Under the pieces are notes generated by a model, which searched no databases, was not told where the DNA came from, and saw nothing but the letters and a program-made list of their open reading frames with translations. Source: Paragordius varius (lineage: Eukaryota > Animalia > Nematomorpha). From it: a stretch of DNA of 64,000 nt. Where the stretch lies: contig OZ176052.1 in NCBI GenBank assembly GCA_964247055.1, forward strand, positions 11,346,001-11,410,000, given 5' to 3'. This document shows, piece by piece, positions 24,553 through 52,990 of the stretch; the stretch's first letter is position 1; each line of letters starts with the position of its first letter. A program made the position numbers and the translations under genes.

Positions 24553-26716
24553 ATGCATATTTCACATAAGTATATATCATATATTATTTTAAACTTTTTA
24601 TGTTGGCAATTTCATGGTGCCATAAATTATGAATCCAATATCATACCTAAATATGGACAGCCCTTGTTAAATGTCTCAAAAACATCAAAACTTGCCAAAA
24701 TGTTGGCCAGTGAAAAAAGAGTTCGGTTAAAAATAGATTATTCAGACAACACTTATGATCCAAGTTCCGATAATTCTCTTTCAACTGCTTCCCATCATTA
24801 TTCCAGGGTGCATTTTGCCTGTGATGGACGCAGTAACGGCGACCGTGACACGGTGAAAAAATGTAAATTACCAGCATGCAAATGTCAGGATGCTAAAATC
24901 CCCAATAACCTCCCGGTTGCACGAATACCCCAATTCGTTATGCTTACGTTTGATGATGCCATAAATTCAGAGAACTTTGATCTCTATCTAAATCTATCAC
25001 GGGCCCGTATAAATCCTAACGCTTGTCCAGCCCAATTCACATTTTTTGTCAGTCATGAATGGACAAACTATCAAATGGTAGCTTACTTGTATGATATGGG
25101 ACATGAGATCGCTTCGCATTCTATAACGCACAGAACACCTCAAACATGGTGGAAAGATGCAAGTGCTGCGGATTGGAAAGACGAAATAGCTGGACAGAGG
25201 AAGATAATTAGCGAATTGGCCAATATACCTTTGCAAGATATCAAGGGGATGAGAGCACCCTTTCTACAAATCGGGGGTAACCGTCAATTCAGCACGCTCC
25301 AGAACGAAGGATTCGAATGGGACTCTTCGCTCCCAACGCGTAAAAATGAGCCACCACTTTGGCCTTTTACATTGCATGAACCACCCTATGATTGCCAAAT
25401 ACCACCATGTCCGACTATGCCATTTGGTAATATTTTTTTACATTTTTAAACAAAAAAAATATAATAATTGTAAGGAGCCCTGATATGAAAGAGTTAATCT
25501 ATTTTGTTACCCTTATTGATTATTATTATTATGCGGACTAAAAAAACCTAAAAATACGATAAAAATGAAACAAACTCTCGGGCATAGTGTCCATAGGACA
25601 AATGATAATCTTTTTGAGAAATTAAAAAAATGTTTTTATGGATCAGATACTTTCTAATTTATAAAATATCAATGATATTTAGATATATGGGAAGTTCCAA
25701 TGGTGGATTACCTGGATAGCTATGAAAGTTTATGTGCTATGGTAGATCAATGTTCTCTCACCTCTGATAATGCCGAAGTTATTTTCGAATTTATGGGCGA
25801 AAACTTTTTGAGACACTACGCTAGTAACAAGGCTCCATTTCCCATTTTCATGCACTCAGCATGGTTGACCAACAATGAGGAACGGAAACGTGGTTTCTTT
25901 AAATTCCTTGACACGATAGCCAAATTAGAAGATGTTTACCTCGTGAGTATATCACAAGTTTTATCGTGGATAAAAAATCCGAAAACGATTGACGAAATGA
26001 AGGCCGTTGGTGAATCTCCTATTCACGATAACTTGGAAACAAAAGTTAGGGATTATTCATCGGATGCAAGGGGGCACCATAATAGAAAAGCGTCAATTAA
26101 ATCGGTCGTATATCCTTTGCCTTACAATGATATTCAAACCTTTGCACATAACAAAGTAAATTCTCACCAAACAGATTTAGGCGCTCTAAAATCAACTACG
26201 AATTATAACGATAAGATGGACAATACTACCATTTTTATATTACCGAAAACGAATAAAAAAATTAATCGAAGCAAAAGAGGAACAGAAATGATCCCAGCCG
26301 CCGATGATTATGACATAGGAAACATTGATGATCGGGATTTCATAACACTTTATCCGTACTGTGGCATAGGTGTGCGAAAACCCCTATCAGTTACGCAATG
26401 TAAGGTCAAGAAATATACCGAATGCTTTTATCAAGGCAAATCGTTGTCAGTTAGTGGAACTGATAACAATGCAAATGATTCTGATCTTCTAACAGGATCT
26501 CAATCAACTTCTCATTACCTACAATCATGTGCCAAAGAATGTCCACTAATATATCCCTGGTTGTCACAACAGCCGAATGAAAACAATATAGTTGATGCCG
26601 ATGGAGAAACAAATAAAGACAACCACGGTGATAACGATTATTTGGATTATAGGAAAAGAAAATATTTTGAGGTAATTTATAATTTTATCGTTCATCTTGA
26701 TAATATTGAAAATTAG
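24553..26716 (+). CDS. Chitin deacetylase-like CE4/NodB unit 1 with intact catalytic motifs and a signal-peptide-like N-terminus; intron 25427-25682; stops at 26716 or splices on at 26671
   Basis: MLTFDDAIN (motif 1), EIASHSITH (motif 2), GMRAPFL, NPNACPAQFTFFVSHEWTNY, PLWPFTL, IWEVPM, APFPIFMH and C-terminal CPLIYPW. Confidence 0.9.
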
Positions 26717-27067
26717 CGTTAAGGCTTTTGGTCAATATTCCGTTGTGTCTTAATAATTTTTTTCCAATTGAGAAAGTATGGGTTAAAAATAAAGGTGTAT
26801 TTTAACAAATTTATCAATAAATACCAACTTCCAAAAAATTGGAGTTAGGCTGCATTTGAAGCAAAAACTAGATTTTCTTAAAACAATTTATTAAAAAATT
26901 AGCTAGAAAATGCTTTGCAAAAATGGTAATTTAGTTGAAAAAAAAACATTATACATATATTCTTCTATTTATTTGAGCAATGTTGAGCATCTAATAATAA
27001 TTGTTTTAATTAATAAAATATAATTCCCAATAATTGTATAAATGCGATCAAATATAGATTAAAGCAT

Positions 27068-28502
27068 TTAGTTATCTATCGACCTATTATAAATTTTTAG
27101 CATATTTTCTTTGATACCAGGTGGTAGTTTATCTATAATATCGTGAAAATTAGTATCTTCTAATTTTTCATTAAAATAAGATTGTAAGATAGACTCCAAA
27201 ATTTGATGCCAAGAAATAACATTACTGCTTTTTTCCAATTCGTCTAACATTGCAGGAGGTAGCAGATCTCTATTTTTTTTGTCAAAATATTCAGCCATTT
27301 GCTTCGTTATTTGCACTGGTTTAAGGTCTTCTGGTTCTTGTTTTATATCTATAAAAATTAAGCATGTGCCTTAAATTATATGATAAATATAGTTAAAATG
27401 ATTATGATCCATAATCTAGAAATTTGTCAAATGTTTTCCCTAACATAATGCGCATGGTATTTATAGATTATGATTCATAAAATAAAGTATATAAAAAAAT
27501 ATTACTTAAATAAAATGATTAATTTAGTATTGAAGCTACTATCTATATCTATGGCTACTGTCACCATCTTTTTTGACATTTAGCAAAATTAGAATAGTCT
27601 ATTCCCTTATGGGGGTAGTTTTATATCCCAGAGTTGAAATTATCTTTAAAAGTATTTGTTTTAAGCTGAATTAAAAAACATGCTTTCTTTAGCATTTTTG
27701 GCGCTTATATATATTTTTTTAAAAATGTAAAAAAATCTTCATCTCAAACTTTTTTGCTGCCATTTATAAAATTTTTAAATCACTAATGCAACAGGCAAAT
27801 AAATGTATATAAGGTTAGAGAATGTAAAAAATTAATTATGAAAAGCGTTTAGCCTATATTTTACCAACAAATACTAATTTATTTTGCTTTTATTAAGGGT
27901 AATATAAGAATAGATTTTAAACCTTATAGCTAATTAGTAAAATATGTCTATTTATTACCATATTAAACTAATTAAACATTTAGTCTCAAATTTATAGACA
28001 CGATTTAAAAATGTTGCGACTGAATTATTTGTATCATATATTCAGGCAAATTTATTAATTTTAAATAAAAGAACATACCATTCAAAGACAATTCTGAATA
28101 ATTTGATAATGTTTTATGATTTAATCTATAAATATAATATGAAAAACTTTGTCGGTTCAATTTTTGCGTCACTGTCTTCTATAATAAATATAATTTACCA
28201 TCTTCTTCTTTAAAAATTGTGTTTGCTAGTTGAATATATTGATTAAATTTGGGTTTAAGAGAATATAAGTCAAGATTCTTCAATATAATTTTGAAAAAAT
28301 GTGTTCGCATGGATTGTGCGCTATGTGGTGTTATTTTAAGTTGGCTCATTGTCTCCCAAAGTTCATTACCATGGCAATTAAATATCTCCTTGTTTCGTAA
28401 AATATAAACAATAATAGCCATATCTTCATTTTTATTGTAATGTTTTCGTTTTTTTCTTTTTGGACTTATTCGGTTCTTCATGTATAACGAGAGCGATTTC
28501 AT
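27068..28502 (-). CDS. Rap1/TERF2IP-type Myb-domain protein, ~194 aa; exons 28502-28199 and 27348-27068
   Basis: RKHYNKNEDMAIIVYILRN...GNELWETMSQLKITPHSAQSMRTHFFKII matches the Rap1 Myb pattern (human ..DDVAILTYVKEN...GNALWKAMEKSSLTQHSWQSLKDRYLKHL). The 850-nt GT-AG intron joins in frame (585 nt total). Confidence 0.7.
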
Positions 28503-28850
28503 ATGTTAATATTTCAACTCAACACTTCGATATAAAAGTGTAATTAACCCTATGTTTATTTTGATTATTATTATTATATACAAAACTTTTGTGGTAGTTT
28601 TCTGTCCCATCGCGATTTAGTTCGATAATAATAAACAGAATATTTTTTAAAACTTATTCAACGATAAAATTTATATTATATTTTTTGATTTCTAAAAAGC
28701 TATAGAATGCCAGCAACTAGAAAAATTTTCATCCATTCAAATTAGACAGGGGTTAAATTGGTGAATTGTAAACCAATTCCCCAAATTCACTGAAGTTTAT
28801 TTTTTACAAAAACATAAAATATGTTTTTATTATTATATATGTAAATAAGG

Positions 28851-29425
28851 TTAACACTTGGATACAACACACTTATTTTAGTCCTTGGATTCAAATTGGG
28901 GTAGTTAAATACCCTAGGCCTGTTTTAAGTGAACTACTTTAAAAAGTATGAAAGGAATCAAAACCATGGCAAAATTTTGCACTTATATAACATTAATAAA
29001 CCGAAATATATAAAAAAATTTATTTAAAAATACTTGATATAAATTATTTTTAGGTAAAACCCAAAGGTAAAAATTTAGTCAACCTGACATGAGTGCATTG
29101 GTTAAATTGAAAAATAATACAAAATAAAGCGCTTTTTCTATCTCTATCAGTGTTAGATGTAATTTAAATAAAAAATTAGCTTTAATTTTACCCTTAAAAT
29201 TAAATGAAGACGATATCCTGCAAAATTTGTAAATGGCGTCCCAGTAGTTTCACATGGAACTTTTTTTTCAAAACAAAATTTTATTTAGATATTTTGGCAT
29301 ATTTATATATTTTATTTGGAAAGCATAAAATTTAAATTGGGTTTCCTTCAGTAGTTTTTTAAAAATCGTAATTCAAATTTTTAGTCTGGGGTATTTAGAT
29401 ACCCCAATTTGAATCGAAGTGTTAA
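28851..29425 (+). mobile_element. piggyBac-type MITE (family B), TTAA-flanked
   Basis: TTAA|CACTTGGAT...AAGTG|TTAA. An inner inverted repeat (GATTCAAATTGGGGTA...TACCCCAATTTGAATC) is spaced asymmetrically at the two ends. A second copy lies reversed at 53287-53822. Confidence 0.8.
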
Positions 29426-29860
29426 TGTGCTGAATCTACGCACCCTATTAATGCCAATGACAGGGTAATTTTAAAATAGATTATAATCTAAAAAAATTTT
29501 TAATTTTAAATATGATTAAAATCGATATGGGACTGGGACCTTGCTAATACCGAAGATGTCATAAATGTATGAAGTAATTAATAATTGCTTTTGGCCGAAA
29601 TGCTAAAAATGTAAATATTTATAATCAGTCAAATTTAATCCCAATGTTAACCCAGATCGAACTCCTTTAAAATTTTTAATAATAATGTGTAAAATTATAA
29701 ACAGTTATCAAAATTTACTCATATGCAAAATGTAGTTAACGGCGTGGTTCATCCCATTTCCAGCCAAAACTGCATAAAACCGCACCATGCCCCCGGCCTT
29801 TTAATCTGTAAGGCATATATTATCCAACAAAAGACCTTTGGAGTAGTTTTATACCGTAAT

Positions 29861-30300
29861 TTAACACTTCATTGCCTTTTCACTTTTGTATCCTAGTTTA
29901 GCTTATGGGGTAGTTTTGTATCCCAGAGCTCAATTTTGTAAAAGAATTAGTATTTTGAAAGTTATTTTTGTTAAAATTTAATTCACAAACCTTGTTCTCA
30001 TGTAAATATAAAAGCTTATATTTTTTACATTTTTGTGACTAAAATTGAGACAGTTCCAAAATACGATTGAAGCAAACAGCTGATAATTTAATCAAAACAC
30101 AACAATTTTGCTGGTAAAATCAAGCTTGAAAGTTTCTTTAAGTTAATTATTCTCACATAATATATATTTATTGGCATTTTTTTAAAAAAAATTATATAAT
30201 GCGCCTAAAACAAAGTATGTTTTTAAATTCGGCAAACCTTAAATACTTTATAATATATTTAAATATAAATTTCTTTTGCATATAAAACCCGGAGTGTTAA
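29861..30300 (+). mobile_element. Family A TTAA MITE copy; a related fragment follows at ~30330-30490
   Basis: Starts TTAACACTTCATTGCC and contains cccagagctcaatttt and aattgagacagttccaaaatacgattgaa; GAGTGTTAA at 30292-30300. Confidence 0.65.
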
Positions 30301-32014
30301 TAACTTATATAATATTTATTAGGTAAATTCGAAAATATGCTATCTTTAGCCTTTTTGCGCATGATATAATTTTAAAATGGCGTAAAATTGTAAAATAATC
30401 CTTATCCAAACTTATTCGCCGCTATTTTTTTTAATATTAAATCGAGAATACAACAGTCAAATAAATGTATATTATGGTTAAAAATGCAAAAAATAACTTT
30501 AATCTTATTCAAAACTCTAGATTTTGGAGTTTTAATTTTTTAACATGCACAAATCCTCCTAAAAGTCAACACAGACAAAGAGGATAAAATGGGATGAAGT
30601 TTTAATTAGGATTTTGAACATAAATTATTTAAAAAACCATAATTTATTCAATTAGATTTCGGAAATCTAATTAACCGCAGAAATTAGAAAATCGTATATT
30701 TTTTAATTATTTATATTTGGCATAAACAAATTATTACTTAAAGTCCAGAAAATGATTTTTTGCATGCTTTTACTAATTACAGATTTATTGCTTTTTACCA
30801 TTTTTAAATAAGCTCAAAAACTTTACACGGATTACAATGTCATAGAAATTGTATGGAGTCGTCTTTTGTTAACGGTGTGATTCGGGGTCAAATCGTTTTG
30901 ACAATACCCATTTTTCGGAAATCAACTATTAATATAATTAAAAACTTAACAATTAACAATCACAATAACGGCAGAATAAATGGGAAAAATTAACTATAAA
31001 ATATTTATAAAAAATTACAATCAGAAACAAGAAAATATGGGTATGCAAATGAATTACGGTGTTTACTTGATTGACGCTATAGATCAAACCCGACCCCTAT
31101 CATTATAAAATTCCCGAATTGCACAACAAAAAATTACCCTTTTTATATTTTTCATTATCGCGGTTCGATCGGCGCATAGATTGTATAAATAGCGTCGAGC
31201 ATCAGTAAAATTACAAGCGCCAAAGTGTAACCATACAAAACCAAGACGCGCCATAGCGGATCAACACTATAACATACTTAAATGGCCATTTTTTAAATGG
31301 AGCACGATATTAGGGCTTAAAACTGGAGCCAAAGAAACATAACCATTTTCAGAATTTTTTGGTAATTTCTATACTTTCGTTCGTGAGCGTAACAAGGGGC
31401 TCCTTTTAAAATGCATATGTACCAATTCGGCTTCTGGCTCCATGTTCGCTTTTTTAAAATTGAAGTCGTTAGTGGTTATAATGCAACCTCAAATTTATAG
31501 AATTTGAGACATTTCTGAAAAATTATCATTCATTATTATAAAATGTCTCTCAAAGTGATAATAAGTATATTTTTCAAAAAATTATAGTGTTAAATAATTA
31601 AATGGTATTTTTGATCCAATGAAAGCACTTATCCAATAAAACACGGTTACTAAATAATAGTTTGATGTTAGCGAATTGCTATTTTAAATACAAATAGCCT
31701 CTATAATGAGCATTGTATGGCAGAATGATTTTCGCCTCTCAAATTTTAATAGCCATAATATATTCTTGATAAGGCATTCAAAATCATCATTTTGCAAAAA
31801 CTTTTATGTTTATAGATTATAATTATATTTAAAAATAAGGGTCGTTTAAAAATATAAATTCAATGATATTAATATTAAATAATTAATTTTTTTAAAATAT
31901 AAAACAAATGATGTTTATTGATATAACATAGCCACAGAAAATCCATTATTTTTGAACTATATTATTAAGTTCCTTCATAGTTGAATAAAATGCTATATAT
32001 CTGTTTTCAAACAG

Positions 32015-34256
32015 GGAAAAAAACAATCAACCTATGATTTGCTTTCTAAAATATTTAAAACTCGTAATTCCATCAAACAAAAAGAACAACCTATTGAACA
32101 ACCTTACCATAAAAAACGAGGTGCCGAAAAAGCCACTTACCTGCTACCAGAAAGATTACAAAAGAAATATGTCAGTCGGGATGCTTATGAATATCCACAC
32201 GAAGAGCATGACGAAATTTTACCGAAACCCCGTAAAAACTTAGAACCATCAAGGTATCAATCAAGGTTGATTCCCGATAAAAAGGAAGAGAATGGCGATT
32301 ATTCAGAAACTAAAATTGCTAAAAATCGATTCGTAAAGCATTCAAAACCTTCATTTTTTTCGAATCCAATAGGGAACAAAAGAGAGGAAAATTATGATAA
32401 ACATGTAGATAGAGAGAACAAACAAAGCAGATATGAGGATGATGATCTTTATAACGATAAAACTAATAACAATGATAATGATGATTCATATCTCTATGAA
32501 CCGAATAGGAGGCGAATGAGCTGCAAAACATCCAATTGTTATCTTCCATATTGTAACTGTGTCTCAGCTAAAATACCCTTTAAAATGCGAAAAAAAGATA
32601 TTCCCCAATTAATTTTACTTTCTTTTGCGGGTGCCATTAACGAATTAAACTATCCGACTTATCTTAAAATTTTAGGGAACATATCGAATTCGAAATCTCA
32701 CACTAATCGAAAAAAGAGGTCCAAAAATGAAGGCTCAAGGCTGAGACTTAATCCCAATGGTTGTCCAATTGCTGCTACGTTTTTTGTATCTCATGAATGG
32801 ACAAATTATCAAATGGTTCATGATCTTTTCAATAGGGGACATGAAATAGCGTTAAACTCAATCAGGTTGTAATTTATAAAAATTAATAAATATACTGTGA
32901 TATATAATGTGCTTTTCAAATAATGTATCTAGTTATCCGGAACCAAAATGGTGGGAAACTGCAAGCTACGATGATTGGGCCCAAGAAATCGGAGATCAGA
33001 AGAAACTTGTTGCTAATTTCGCAAACATAACGGAAGATGAAATAGTCGGTTTACGGGTCCCCTATTTGATGACAGGCGGTGACAAACAATTCAGGTTTTA
33101 AACAGGAACACGATTTATGAAAATAAAATTTTTAAAAATGAAGTATATAAAATTTGTTTAACCCAGAATGCTTAAAGATTATGGATTCGAATATGATGCC
33201 ACTATTGCGACGGAAAGCATAAATCCGCCAATTTGGCCTTATACTCTCGATTATCCGTCTTCACTGGATGAATGTTCTGCCATAGATTGTCCAACAGATG
33301 GGTATCCAGGAATCTGGGAAATACCGATTATAAAGTACGTAGATGGTTTAGGTAAACTATGTACAACCCTACCAAATTGTCAAATTGAACAGGACGAACC
33401 AAGTAACGAAAAAGATGACAGATACATGAATTATGGGAGTAGGGGGGACGTAGTGAAGGAAAAACGAGATAGAAAAAATATTAAACGTGTGTTTGATTTA
33501 CTTAGCAGTAACTTCCAAGCTCATTATGAAACGAATAAAGCTCCATTTCACCTAGCAATTTATTGGGAATGGTTAATGCCTCATAATGATGGTCACGCCC
33601 CTGAAGAGGATACGGATGAAAGCAGCAAAAATGTCGAGGAGAAAAAACGAAAAAAGCGAGATAATGGAAAGTATGGAGATGATGCACCCAAATACTATGA
33701 TGCAGTTGAAGCGAACAACAATGGTGATGATGGTTATGGACAAGATGGTTCATCTAAAAAATCCAATACGCACAACTCTCACCATAGAGACAAAGACACA
33801 CCTGAGTCTGATTACAACGATCATGGATCAAGCCATTCAAAAAATGTCAATCTCGAAGCTTTGCTCCAATTTCTCGATCTAATAAGTACGATGGATGATG
33901 TCTACATTGTGACACATAAAGATGCTATTACCTGGATGAAAAACCCACTTGATATTGAGAATTTAGCTAACCCTACATCTTTTTTGAGGAAGCAACAAGG
34001 ACTTAGGAAACAATATAATGGTTACCATCATCAAAATAAAAAGTTACTTGACGATGCCATTGAAAATAGCGGTCCTTGGATGTGTAAAAGAGCCCTGAAT
34101 TATGGGAGAAACGATTTTCACGATAATAATGTTCATTGCACCGTGAAAGAATATACGAATTGCGCTTATGATACGGAACGCGGATTAAAATACTTTTTCC
34201 CGTGCGGTGAATGCCCAGCCAATTATCCATGGACAAAAAATCCACTGGGTCTTTAA
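32015..34256 (+). CDS. Chitin deacetylase-like CE4 unit 2 with degenerate active site; exons 32015-32865, 32933-33094, 33167-34256; no own start codon found
   Basis: LNPNGCPIAATFFVSHEWTNY, GLRVPYL, PIWPYTL, GIWEIP, APFHLAIY and CPANYPW are present. Motif 1 is LLSFAGAIN and motif 2 is EIALNSISY. Introns of 67 and 72 nt restore the frame. Confidence 0.88.
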
Positions 34257-50394: not shown

Positions 50395-52990
50395 AATCAA
50401 TCATCGCTTTCCAACCAAATTATATTACCTTATAAGGATATTTTCAAAACAATCATACATGCTTTTTAACATCAACCAGTACATTTCAACAATTAACCAT
50501 AATTAACAATCAACAATACTTTTCAACAATTAACCATTATTTTTCAACAATATTTTTCAACAATCAACCATACTTTTAACAATCAGCCAAGATTCTCTAA
50601 CAACCCTTTATACTACCCAGGCTGATATCTATATACTAAAATGGATATGGGTATTTTCCCACAATCAACCATTAATTTCTAATCAGCACAACAATCAATC
50701 ATTAATTTCAACAATCAACCAATTTTCCAACAATCTTATTGTATTACTAGGCTAATTTTAACCATTGCTTAAATATAAACCATTACTACCCAACAACTGC
50801 CATTACATTCCAACAATCAACTATTACCTTCCTACAATCAAGCTACCTTCCAAGTATCAACCATTACTTTCCAACAATCAAGCATACCTTCCACAATCAA
50901 GCATACCTTCCACAATCAAGCATACTTTAAAGCAATCAACCATTACTTTCCAACAATCAGACTATTTTTTTAAACAATCGAGAATTCCTTCCAAAATTAA
51001 CCATTACTTTCTAACAATCAACCATTACTTTACACATAACCATTTATTTCCAATCAAGCATTCTTTCCAACAATCAGTCATTTTTTAAAACAATCAAGCA
51101 TACCTTCCAACAAAAACCATTACTTTCTAACAATCAACCATTGCATTACAATTAACCGGTATTATCCTACAATCAACCATTACCTTTCAACAATCAAACG
51201 GATTTTCCAACAATCACCCATTTTTGCAAACAATCAAGCATACTTTCCAGCAGTCACCCATTTTTTTCAAACAATCTACCATACTTTCCAATAATGACCC
51301 ATTTCTTTAAAACAATTAAGCATACTTTCCAACATTTAACCATTGCTTTCAAACAATCACTCATTTTCAAAAATCAGGTATACCTTCCAACAAGCAAGCA
51401 TACCTTCCAATAATCGCCCATTGCTTTCAACAATCTATACCTTCTAACAATAAACCATTACTGTCCAACAATTGAGCATACCTCAACACTCAACCATTAC
51501 CTTCCAATAATCAAGCATGGCTTCCAACAATCAAGCATACTTTCCAACAATCAACTATTACCTTCCTACAATCAAGCTTACTTTCCATCAATCAACCATT
51601 ACTTTCCATGCATACTTTACAAAAATTAACCATTATTTTCTAAAAATCAGACTATTTTTTCAACAATCAACCATTACTTTCTAACTATCAAGCATAATTT
51701 CCAACAATCCCCCATTTCTTTACAACAACTACACATTTCTTATAAACAATTAAACATTATTTTTAACAATCAATTATTGCTTTCCAACAACCCATTTTTT
51801 TCAAACAATCAAGCATATCTTCCAAAAGTTACCATTACTTTCCAACAATCACCCATTTCTTTCAAACAATCAACCATATTTTCCCCAATAATCCATTTCT
51901 CTTAAACAATTAAGCATACTTTCCAACAATCAACCATTGCTTTCCAACAAGCACCCATTTTTTTCAAACAATGCATACTTTCTAACAATCAGCCACTTCT
52001 TGCTAACAAAGCATACTTTACAACAATCAAACATCACTTTATACAGCAATCAGCCTATTCTTTGGAGCAATCAATCTTACTTTCTAACAATCAACGCTTT
52101 CCAACAATTAATCATTACTTTCCAACAATCAGCCATTTTCCAACAATCAAGCATACCTTCCAACAATCTATCATTACTGTTTAAAAATCGACCATTGATT
52201 TGCAACAATTAAACATAACTTTCCATCAACTACCATTACCTTCCGATAATCTTCCCTTTCTTTCCAAATATTAAGCATGCCTTCGAACAATCATGCATAC
52301 TTTCCAACAATCAACCATTACTTTCAAACAATCAGGCATTTCTTTCCAACAATCAAGCATTTCCAAAAATCAATTATGCCATCCATCAAACAAGCATACT
52401 TTACAACCAACCATTAATTTCCAACAATCACCCATTTCTTTTAAATAGGCATACTTTCCAAGAATCAAACATTGCTTTCCAACAATCATTCATTTTTTCA
52501 AACAATCAAGTATACCTTCCAGCATCACCCATTAACAATCAAGCATTGCTAACAATTAACCATTTATTTCCAACAATCAAGCAAACCTTCCAACAATCAC
52601 CCATTTTTTCTAACAATCAAGCATACCTTCAAACAATCAACCATTTCTTTACTATTAACCATTAATATCCAACAATCGACCATTTCTTTCTAACAATTAA
52701 CCATTACTTTCCAACAATCAACCAATTCTTTTTAACACTCAAGACATTACAACAATTAGCCAATACTCAACGATCAACCATTTCTCTCCAATAATCAAGC
52801 ATGAATTCCAACAATAAACCACTACTTTCCAACAATCAACCCTACAATCAAACATACCTTTTTAACAATCCATTACTTTCCAACAATCAATCACACCTTC
52901 CAACAATCATTACTTTCCATAAATCAACCATATTCAAAAATTTATACTTTCCAATAATTCGTTATCGTTTTTAGCAATCAACTATACTTT
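50395..52990. repeat. ~2.6-kb degenerate minisatellite/satellite with 20-21-nt units
   Basis: Near-invariant core TTCCAACAATCA alternates with variable linkers (ACCATTACT, AGCATACC, CCCATTTCT). The + strand is C/A-rich and almost G-free. Confidence 0.95.

What the first reader, a model, noticed from the sequence alone, without database searches (positions are those of the whole stretch)
24553..34256. Possible single ~1320-aa tandem deacetylase: active CE4 domain fused to a dead CE4 domain
Unit 1 has a good donor just before its stop (GAG|GTAATT at 26671/26672, phase 0). Unit 2 opens at a good acceptor (TTTTCAAACAG|G at 32014/32015, phase 0, in frame). There is no in-frame ATG between the upstream stop (31982-31984) and that acceptor, and no signal peptide for unit 2. 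Joining gives 1863+2103 nt = 1321 aa: signal peptide, intact NodB domain, long charged linker, degenerate NodB domain. There is no CBM14 or LDLa domain as in arthropod Serpentine/Vermiform. The second domain could act as a built-in polysaccharide-binding or regulatory module. I do not know this architecture from characterised animal CDAs. The 5.3-kb intron would host an antisense gene and several MITEs.
Basis: partly seen in the sequence, partly recalled or inferred. Interest (0 to 1): 0.75.

Follow-up and report, generated by a model that had tools for sequence, protein, structure and literature searches.

The report
Two-domain chitin deacetylase, second domain dead
Two neighbouring chitin-deacetylase-like units in this very AT-rich worm genome are most likely one gene for a secreted ~1321-residue protein, with a working enzyme domain followed by a catalytically dead copy; the same layout occurs, uncharacterised, in another horsehair worm and probably arose separately in molluscs.

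Summary
Unit 1 (24553-26671) has a signal-peptide-like start and all six CE4 catalytic/metal residues checked (D,D,H,H,R,H). Unit 2 (32015-34256) has lost five of the six (A,G,N,Y,R,Y). Its frame is open for 177 codons with no ATG and starts at the only acceptor there.

The fusion is supported, but not by RNA from this species. The best hit among 1.84 billion representatives is a 1384-aa gene model from the horsehair worm Gordionus (CAK9302638.1). It is collinear with unit 1 plus unit 2. Its sequence runs across exactly the proposed junction (...RKRKYYE|AQKRPTHYDLLSKI against ...RKRKYFE|GKKQSTYDLLSKI), and it has the same dead residues. The junction flanks are the best-conserved part of the linker. 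No separate signal-peptide exon was found in the 5.3-kb intron, which holds a nested antisense Rap1-Myb gene and MITE copies.

The architecture is not unique. 49 of 363 fetched relatives have two or more CE4 domains, and most are active first, dead second (molluscs; some on mRNA-sized contigs). A tree suggests the nematomorph duplication is independent of the molluscan one (AU p = 0.04, marginal).

I found no paper describing such proteins.

The parts
24553..25426 (+). Exon 1: start codon, signal-peptide-like N-terminus (MHISHKYISYIILNFLCWQFHGA), Cys motif CKLPACKC, and CE4 motifs 1-3 of the active domain (TFDDA, HSITH, RAPF)
   Evidence: PF01522, 34.6 bits against cutoff 23.1; 71% identity to P0106 residues 156-372; BmCDA8 5Z34, E 7e-55
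25427..25682 (+). Intron 1 (256 nt, GT..AG, phase 1)
   Evidence: The reading frame and the P0106 alignment resume at 25685.
25683..26671 (+). Exon 2: rest of the active domain with the catalytic-acid His (FMHSAW), a disordered linker with a conserved RSKR, the canonical C-terminal Cys motif (CAKECPLIYPW), and a 36-residue tail ending in the conserved DYLDYRKRKYFE
26672..32014 (+). Inferred intron 2 (5343 nt, GTAATT...AACAG, phase 0). The first 45 nt would give a 14-residue unconserved read-through tail and a stop (TAG 26714-26716) if left unspliced.
   Evidence: The Gordionus model continues across the homologous junction.
27068..28502 (-). Nested antisense gene: probably two exons (about 28502-28200 and about 27330-27068), with a Rap1-type Myb domain; essentially single copy
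   Evidence: (PF08914, E 1.6e-10)
28884..29419 (.). MITE-like element with 34-nt terminal inverted repeats (GGGGTAGTT...ATACCC). Related ends lie at about 27612, about 28590 and about 29907.
   Evidence: 3503 first-look candidates genome-wide; scored copies 86-87% identical
32015..32865 (+). Exon 3: 170-residue charged Met-less linker (conserved YDLLSKI and TYLLPER), Cys motif CYLPYCNC, dead motif 1 (SFAGA), an inserted loop with conserved RKKR, and the start of dead motif 2 (NSI)
32866..32932 (+). Intron 3 (67 nt, phase 2)
   Evidence: The P0106 alignment is continuous (ALNSISYP).
32933..33094 (+). Exon 4: rest of dead motif 2 (S-Y in place of T-H), and motif 3 retained (RVPY)
33095..33166 (+). 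Intron 4 (72 nt, phase 2)
33167..34256 (+). Exon 5: second half of the dead domain (catalytic-acid His replaced by Tyr, AIYWEW), a charged insert, the canonical C-terminal motif CGECPANYPWTKNPLGL, and stop TAA at 34254-34256
   Evidence: (47% identity to P0106 residues 961-1383)

Best explanation
Units 1 and 2 are one five-exon gene (24553-34256, + strand). It encodes a secreted protein of about 1321 residues.

Layout of the protein, from the N-terminus:
- a signal peptide;
- a catalytically competent CE4/NodB chitin-deacetylase domain of the 'CDA-domain-only' type (no CBM14, no LDLa);
- its normal Cys-rich C-terminal motif;
- a charged, disordered linker of about 200 residues that is encoded across a 5.3-kb intron;
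- a complete second CE4 domain. This domain keeps the core sequence of the family and the motif-3 arginine. It has lost the catalytic base, all three metal ligands and the catalytic acid.

The pair arose by tandem duplication and fusion before this worm and Gordionus diverged, and both halves have been kept under selection since.

Shown:
- the sequence features;
- orthology and collinearity with a single Gordionus gene model;
- conservation of the dead residues;
- the conserved junction flanks.

Inferred:
- The splice itself is inferred.
- The single signal peptide is inferred to carry both domains into the secretory pathway.
- The dead domain is inferred to work as a non-catalytic chitin/chitosan-binding or positioning module for the active domain. 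That would stand in for the chitin-binding domain this subfamily lacks.
- Conserved polybasic motifs (RSKR, RKRK at the junction, RKKR) leave open that the precursor is cut by a proprotein convertase into separate pieces.
For: (1) The top hit of an exhaustive HMMER search is P0106: 1384 aa, two CE4 stretches, 524 bits. It is CAK9302638.1 from Gordionus sp. m RMFG-2023.

(2) tblastn of P0106 on the window is collinear:
- residues 156-372 map to 24790-25437;
- residues 371-652 map to 25685-26671;
- residues 651-963 map to 32006-32863;
- residues 961-1383 map to 32922-34250.
No P0106 residues are left unaccounted for at the junction.

(3) Junction flanks:
- DYLD[YF]RKRKY[FY]E lies immediately before the junction.
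- YDLLSKI lies 6-7 residues after it.
- These are the best-conserved islands in an otherwise poorly conserved linker.
- The 14 read-through codons after the donor have no counterpart in P0106.

(4) Unit 2's frame is open for 177 codons before the first Met (P about 2e-6). It begins at the only AG acceptor in range, phase 0. That matches the only good phase-0 donor in unit 1's tail.

(5) No signal-peptide first exon was found in 26717-32014. The best candidate, at 28552-28593, sits in a MITE end.

(6) The dead signature is conserved: A,G,N,Y,R,Y here and S,G,N,Y,R,Y in Gordionus. Core blocks such as TFF[VI]SHEWTNYQMV are intact.

(7) The Gordionus annotation used RNA-seq hints: BRAKER1 and BRAKER2 combined with TSEBRA.

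(8) Multi-CE4 proteins occur on mRNA-sized Logan contigs elsewhere. Examples are P0183 (1098 aa on 3839 bp) and P0257 (1402 aa on 4874 bp). Such transcripts therefore exist in animals.
Against:
- The Gordionus protein is itself a gene prediction, and its DNA could not be inspected. I did not verify intron position and support there.
- A 5.3-kb intron with a nested gene is long next to the 67-256-nt introns of the same gene.
- Unit 1 ends with a complete canonical family C-terminus, and an AATAAA lies about 100 nt after its read-through stop. A short unit-1-only isoform is therefore possible.
- The binding and processing roles are inference only.
Confidence: 0.8

Rival explanations
1. Two separate tandem paralogous genes. 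Unit 1 ends at the TAG at 26716. Unit 2 has its own small first exon (start codon plus signal peptide) somewhere in 28.6-32.0 kb that I failed to recognise. On this reading the Gordionus model is a gene-finder fusion of neighbours.
For: - Unit 1 has a complete canonical C-terminal motif (homologue ends).
- A convergent antisense gene and a repeat-rich stretch that could hold a promoter lie between the units.
- Gene finders do fuse tandem paralogues. The Carabus and Spodoptera multi-domain models may be examples.
Against: - The scan of every ATG-to-GT phase-0 mini-exon in 26717-32014 gave no credible signal peptide with a decent donor.
- The conserved motif runs right up to the donor and resumes right after the acceptor.
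- The read-through tail is not conserved.
- Unit 1's 36-residue post-YPW tail is open and ends in a conserved motif.
Confidence: 0.1
2. Both forms are made. A short isoform (unit 1 only) comes from intron retention or intronic polyadenylation. The long fused isoform also exists. The ratio of free active enzyme to enzyme tethered to the dead domain would then be regulated.
For: - The in-frame stop lies only 14 codons into the intron.
- An AATAAA lies at about 26817.
- The intron is long.
Against: - AATAAA is expected by chance about every 400 nt at this base composition.
- The read-through tail is not conserved with Gordionus.
- There are no RNA data.
Confidence: 0.06
3. Unit 2 is expressed on its own without a signal peptide, from the Met at 32516 or after trans-splicing at 32014/32015. 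Alternatively it is a decaying pseudogene.
For: - The acceptor at 32014 is followed 19 nt later by an ATG (32034).
- The catalytic residues are lost.
Against: - The ATG at 32034 is out of frame and its ORF stops after 69 codons.
- The 170 Met-less codons are conserved at protein level with Gordionus.
- 700 codons are intact, with 47-61% identity to the Gordionus second domain.
- The Cys-rich motifs argue for a secreted protein.
- A remembered rotifer spliced-leader pattern was absent (weak test).
Confidence: 0.04

Closest known systems
Gordionus sp. m RMFG-2023 (G. montsenyensis) protein CAK9302638.1, 'unnamed protein product', 1384 aa
   Same: It is a one-to-one collinear orthologue. The shared features are the signal-peptide-like start, the active CE4 domain, the linker with RSKR, the YPW motif, the junction motif RKRKY-E / YDLLSKI, the loop with RKKR, the dead CE4 domain and the NPLG end.
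   Different: - Identity is 71% in domain 1, about 47-61% in domain 2 and about 40% in the linkers.
- The N-terminal region is longer and the linker lengths differ.
- It is a prediction with no name or function attached.
Insect chitin deacetylases with solved structures: Bombyx mori BmCDA8 (PDB 5Z34) and BmCDA1 (5ZNS/5ZNT); arthropod group V 'CDA-domain-only' enzymes
   Same: - Domain 1 matches at E 7e-55 and 1e-50.
- It has the same CE4 motifs, D,D,H,H,R,H.
- It has no CBM14 or LDLa, like group V.
- The Cys-rich N- and C-terminal motifs are shared with about 390-aa single-domain animal CDAs.
   Different: - Those are single-domain proteins of about 370-400 aa.
- Here a second, inactive copy is attached by a long linker.
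- Serpentine and Vermiform (group I) carry CBM14 and LDLa, which are absent here.
Molluscan 'uncharacterized protein' two-CE4 proteins (Octopus sinensis LOC118766574, Dreissena polymorpha LOC127880081, Mytilus, Pecten, Haliotis, Saccostrea, Mercenaria)
   Same: - The layout is the same: signal peptide, active domain (DDHHRH), a long low-complexity linker (150-1350 aa), then a dead domain.
- In the dead domain the metal-binding Asp is Gly and the His residues are lost.
   Different: - They form a separate clade. Their first and second domains are each other's sisters (99*/100*/96*), so the duplication was probably independent (AU p = 0.0425).
- Their second domain lacks the C-terminal Cys motif.
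- Their linkers are Q/E/R- or T-rich.
Stand-alone inactive NodB proteins: Bacillus anthracis Ba0150 (4M1B) and Encephalitozoon cuniculi EcCDA (2VYO)
   Same: Each keeps the NodB fold but has lost metal or catalytic residues (PMC10967932, read).
   Different: - They are single-domain microbial proteins.
- They are not fused to an active paralogue.
- They are not close in sequence.

Membership tests
CE4 / NodB polysaccharide deacetylase (Pfam PF01522): unit 1 | Significant match to the family profile | tested here: met
   PF01522 at 34.6 bits against cutoff 23.1. PDB chitin deacetylases at E 7e-55.
CE4 / NodB polysaccharide deacetylase: unit 1 | Catalytic and metal residues: MT1 D-D, MT2 H..H, MT3 R, MT5 H | tested here: met
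   D,D,H,H,R from exon 1 and H from exon 2, by alignment to a profile of 39 single-domain CDAs. 248 single-domain relatives share DDHHRH. Enzyme activity itself was not tested.
CE4 / NodB polysaccharide deacetylase: unit 2 | Homology to the family over the whole domain | tested here: met
   - No Pfam hit for the separate exons at E <= 0.01.
- BLASTP to unit 1 gives E 6e-28.
- tblastn covers all parts.
- The Gordionus second domain spans profile positions 20-376.
CE4 / NodB polysaccharide deacetylase: unit 2 | Catalytic and metal residues present | tested here: not met
   A,G,N,Y,R,Y in place of D,D,H,H,R,H (plus direct reading of the exon junction and of exon 4). Gordionus has S,G,N,Y,R,Y. Unit 2 is a family member by descent and not a metal-dependent deacetylase.
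Arthropod group I/II CDAs (Serpentine/Vermiform type) | CBM14 chitin-binding domain and LDLa domain N-terminal to the CE4 domain | tested here: not met
   No PF01607 or LDLa hit in any exon. The precomputed Pfam result for the Gordionus orthologue is PF01522 only.
Tandem active-plus-dead CE4 proteins (uncharacterised, mainly molluscan) | Common descent of the dead second domain | tested here: inconclusive
   - The free tree places the nematomorph second domain with nematomorph first domains, away from the molluscan clade.
- Forcing one clade costs 39.2 lnL, AU p = 0.0425.
- This is a marginal result from a quick tree with a simple model.
Single transcription unit (fusion gene) | A transcript joining 26671 to 32015 | not testable with these tools
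Support comes only from the orthologous gene model and conservation.
Secreted protein | N-terminal signal peptide | tested here: inconclusive
   No predictor was available. By eye there is a basic n-region (MHISHK), a 14-residue hydrophobic core and HGA before the likely cut. Homologues have clear signal peptides at the same place.

The most novel reading that the evidence does not exclude
Pairing an active CE4 chitin deacetylase with a dead copy of itself on one polypeptide has arisen independently in at least two animal lineages, possibly three: nematomorphs, the mollusc-type clade and the P0111 clade. That would imply a general, undescribed working principle. The pseudo-deacetylase would act as a dedicated chitin/chitosan-recognition or patterning partner. 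In nematomorphs the two might be released from a common precursor at conserved polybasic sites.
Probability: 0.3. Interest if true: 0.65.

Novelty: new variant of a known kind. Interest (0 to 1): 0.5.

Why it matters
- Animal chitin deacetylases are studied almost only as single catalytic domains, with or without CBM14/LDLa. How they find and pattern chitin is poorly understood.
- A conserved, recurrent fusion of an active domain to a catalytically dead paralogue offers a natural system for asking what a pseudo-deacetylase does. Candidate roles are binding, processivity, product protection and regulation.
- For this genome, the finding corrects what could be annotated as two genes, one of them headless, into one. 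It also adds a chitin-modifying protein to a phylum whose cuticle and larval biology are little known.
- It matters less than it might. The orthologue is already in GenBank as an unnamed model, similar layouts are common among predicted molluscan proteins, and nothing about function is shown.

Tried and rejected
- Own first exon for unit 2: I listed every ATG-initiated, stop-free, phase-0 GT-terminated mini-exon in 26717-32014 and ranked them by hydrophobicity and donor match. The only hydrophobic candidate (28552-28593) lies in a MITE terminal repeat and has a weak donor, so I rejected it.
- Out-of-frame ATG at 32034 as a start after trans-splicing or an assembly frameshift: its ORF is 69 codons and poorly hydrophobic. 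The main frame is conserved with Gordionus from the acceptor onward. Rejected.
I had guessed a rotifer from genome size and GC. The Gordionus hit, and other agents' notes calling this a horsehair worm, replaced that guess.
- Word searches with unit 1 exon 1 and unit 2 exon 1 found only single-domain relatives at 55% identity or less. The length window excluded long relatives. Only the exhaustive search revealed them.
- Junction-spanning transcript fragments: none found.
- Literature searches for two-domain animal CDAs or CE4 pseudoenzymes fused to active domains found nothing specific.
- All searches were exon by exon, or used the natural Gordionus protein. That protein, at 1384 aa, exceeds the 1200-aa limit for structure prediction, so no fold was computed.
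Full report
**What is in the sequence**

The window is about 26% GC. It lies at C3:11,346,001-11,410,000 of a 110.6-Mb assembly.

Two CE4-like units lie 5.3 kb apart on the + strand.

Unit 1 starts at the ATG at 24553 with a signal-peptide-like N-terminus. It has one 256-nt intron (25427-25682) and runs to a GAG|GTAATT donor at 26671/26672. If that donor is not used, the frame stops 14 codons later (TAG 26714-26716).

Unit 2's frame opens after a TGA at 31982-31984 and reaches a CTGTTTTCAAACAG|G acceptor at 32014/32015. It has two short introns (32866-32932 and 33095-33166) and ends at TAA 34254-34256.

Both junction sites are phase 0.

The first in-frame Met of unit 2 is codon 177 of its open frame. 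At the window's own stop-codon frequency, an open run that long has a probability of about 2e-6. The Met-less stretch is therefore coding and needs an upstream exon.

In unit 1's last 50 codons, the GT at 26672 is the only phase-0 GT with a donor-like context. In the first 70 nt of unit 2's frame, the AG at 32013-32014 is the only AG.

**Active and dead domains**

Unit 1 exon 1 passes the Pfam PF01522 threshold. It matches the two solved insect chitin deacetylases, BmCDA8 5Z34 and BmCDA1 5ZNS, at E 7e-55 and 1e-50.

I aligned the exons to a profile of 39 single-domain animal CDAs:
- Unit 1 carries D,D,H,H,R,H at the catalytic base, the three metal ligands, the motif-3 arginine and the catalytic acid.
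- Unit 2 carries A,G,N,Y,R,Y. The second-His position at an exon junction and the arginine in exon 4 were read directly from the sequence.

The units are 46% identical over the first half of the domain, and unit 2 keeps long family blocks intact.

Each unit also contains the family's N-terminal C-x-LP-x-C-x-C motif and its C-terminal C..CP..YPW motif. In single-domain relatives the latter lies 8-20 residues from the stop. No CBM14 or LDLa domain is present.

**Is it one gene?**

The word-index search could not see long relatives and returned only single-domain proteins of about 390 aa at 55% identity or less.

The exhaustive search of 1.84 billion representatives gave a different picture. Its top hit, P0106, is 1384 aa and has two CE4 stretches. 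It is CAK9302638.1, an unnamed protein of the horsehair worm Gordionus sp. m RMFG-2023.

tblastn of P0106 on the window is collinear through all five exons, with no P0106 residues missing at the junction:
- P0106 reads ...DYLDFRKRKYYE AQKRPTHYDLLSKILK...
- The window reads ...DYLDYRKRKYFE | GKKQSTYDLLSKIFK...

The flanks of the junction are the best-conserved islands of an otherwise poorly conserved linker. The window's read-through tail has no counterpart in P0106.

The Gordionus annotation combined RNA-seq-guided and protein-guided BRAKER runs with TSEBRA. This makes the model better than purely ab initio. It does not prove this particular intron.

A systematic scan of the 5.3-kb interval found no credible separate signal-peptide exon. 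The one hydrophobic candidate lies in a repeat end.

Taken together, I put about 0.8 on a single fused gene.

What is missing is RNA:
- No junction-spanning fragments were in the protein collections.

**The intron**

It holds a minus-strand, probably two-exon gene with a Rap1-type Myb domain (27068-28502). That gene is essentially single copy.

It also holds a ~570-bp inverted-repeat element (28884-29419), with thousands of candidate copies at about 86-87% identity. Further repeat ends of the same kind are present.

Repeat insertion plausibly explains its length.

**How common is the layout?**

Among the 363 relatives fetched, 49 have two or more CE4 domains. In most of the two-domain proteins the first domain is DDHHRH. 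The second has Gly in place of the metal-binding Asp and lacks the histidines.

Named examples are 'uncharacterized proteins' of Octopus, Dreissena, Mytilus, Pecten, Haliotis, Saccostrea, Mercenaria and Gigantopelta.

Some sit on contigs barely longer than their coding sequence, so they are mRNA-like:
- 1098 aa on 3839 bp;
- 1402 aa with four domains on 4874 bp.

This shows that such multi-domain transcripts exist.

In a quick maximum-likelihood tree of 96 domains, the mollusc-type first and second domains are sister clades (starred supports). The nematomorph first and second domains sit together with another Gordionus CDA elsewhere in the tree, with weak support.

Forcing the nematomorph dead domain into the molluscan dead-domain clade costs 39 log-likelihood units, AU p = 0.0425. 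Independent origin is therefore favoured, but only marginally.

Searches of the paper library found no description of two-domain animal CDAs. Stand-alone inactive NodB proteins are known in microbes.

**Mechanism**

The following points are shown:
- one signal peptide, at the start of unit 1 only;
- a catalytically complete first domain;
- a second domain with five of six key residues replaced, and the replacements conserved between two genera;
- a conserved linker motif at the splice junction.

The following points are inferred:
- The protein enters the secretory pathway as one chain.
- The dead domain keeps the fold and serves as a chitin/chitosan-binding, positioning or regulatory partner of the active domain.

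Two canonical R-x-K/R-R motifs are conserved with Gordionus: RSKR in unit 1's linker and RKKR in a loop of unit 2. An RKRK at the junction is conserved too. Cleavage by a proprotein convertase into separate pieces is therefore possible. This is speculation.

**Context in the genome**

Besides this pair, the assembly has one CE4 locus on C2 and a near-duplicate pair on C1.

Earlier notes of this scan describe the C1 pair as a duplicated gene tail. They describe another CDA, which I take to be the C2 locus, as a CDA fused to a long basic tail. The latter resembles the 1266-aa Gordionus paralogue P0113.

The active-plus-dead pair is the only one of its kind in this genome.

**Verdict**

The feature is a new variant of a known enzyme family rather than a new kind of system. 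Its orthologue is already deposited but unnamed, and its function is untested.

Noticed in passing
window 50800-52930: A ~2.1-kb degenerate satellite of 20-21-nt units (consensus near TTCCAACAATCAACCATT). It is strongly C-over-G on the + strand (GC skew -0.58 to -0.41) and contains no long ORF.
   Followed up: partly
window 28884-29419 (related ends near 27612, 28590, 29907): A ~570-bp MITE-like element with 34-nt terminal inverted repeats. The genome search gave 3503 first-look candidates, and the scored copies are 86-87% identical. This is a very abundant family of middling age.
   Followed up: partly
window 27068-28502, minus strand: A small nested gene with a Rap1-type Myb domain (PF08914, E 1.6e-10), apparently two exons. 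It is single copy apart from a distant relative at C4:92974-93232.
   Followed up: partly
G000:C1:10761487-10763404 and 10768833-10770748 (L014, L015): Two near-identical CDA copies 7.3 kb apart on the minus strand.
   Followed up: no
G000:C2:9223290-9224139 (L016); Gordionus P0113: A third CDA paralogue. The 1266-aa Gordionus paralogue P0113 is a complete single-domain CDA followed by about 840 residues of N/K-rich low-complexity tail.
   Followed up: no
P0107 / P0253 (ENA, unnamed): Predicted proteins with four and five nearly identical, fully active CE4 domains in tandem (2316 and 2669 aa). They are either real poly-CDAs or tandem genes fused by gene prediction.
   Followed up: no
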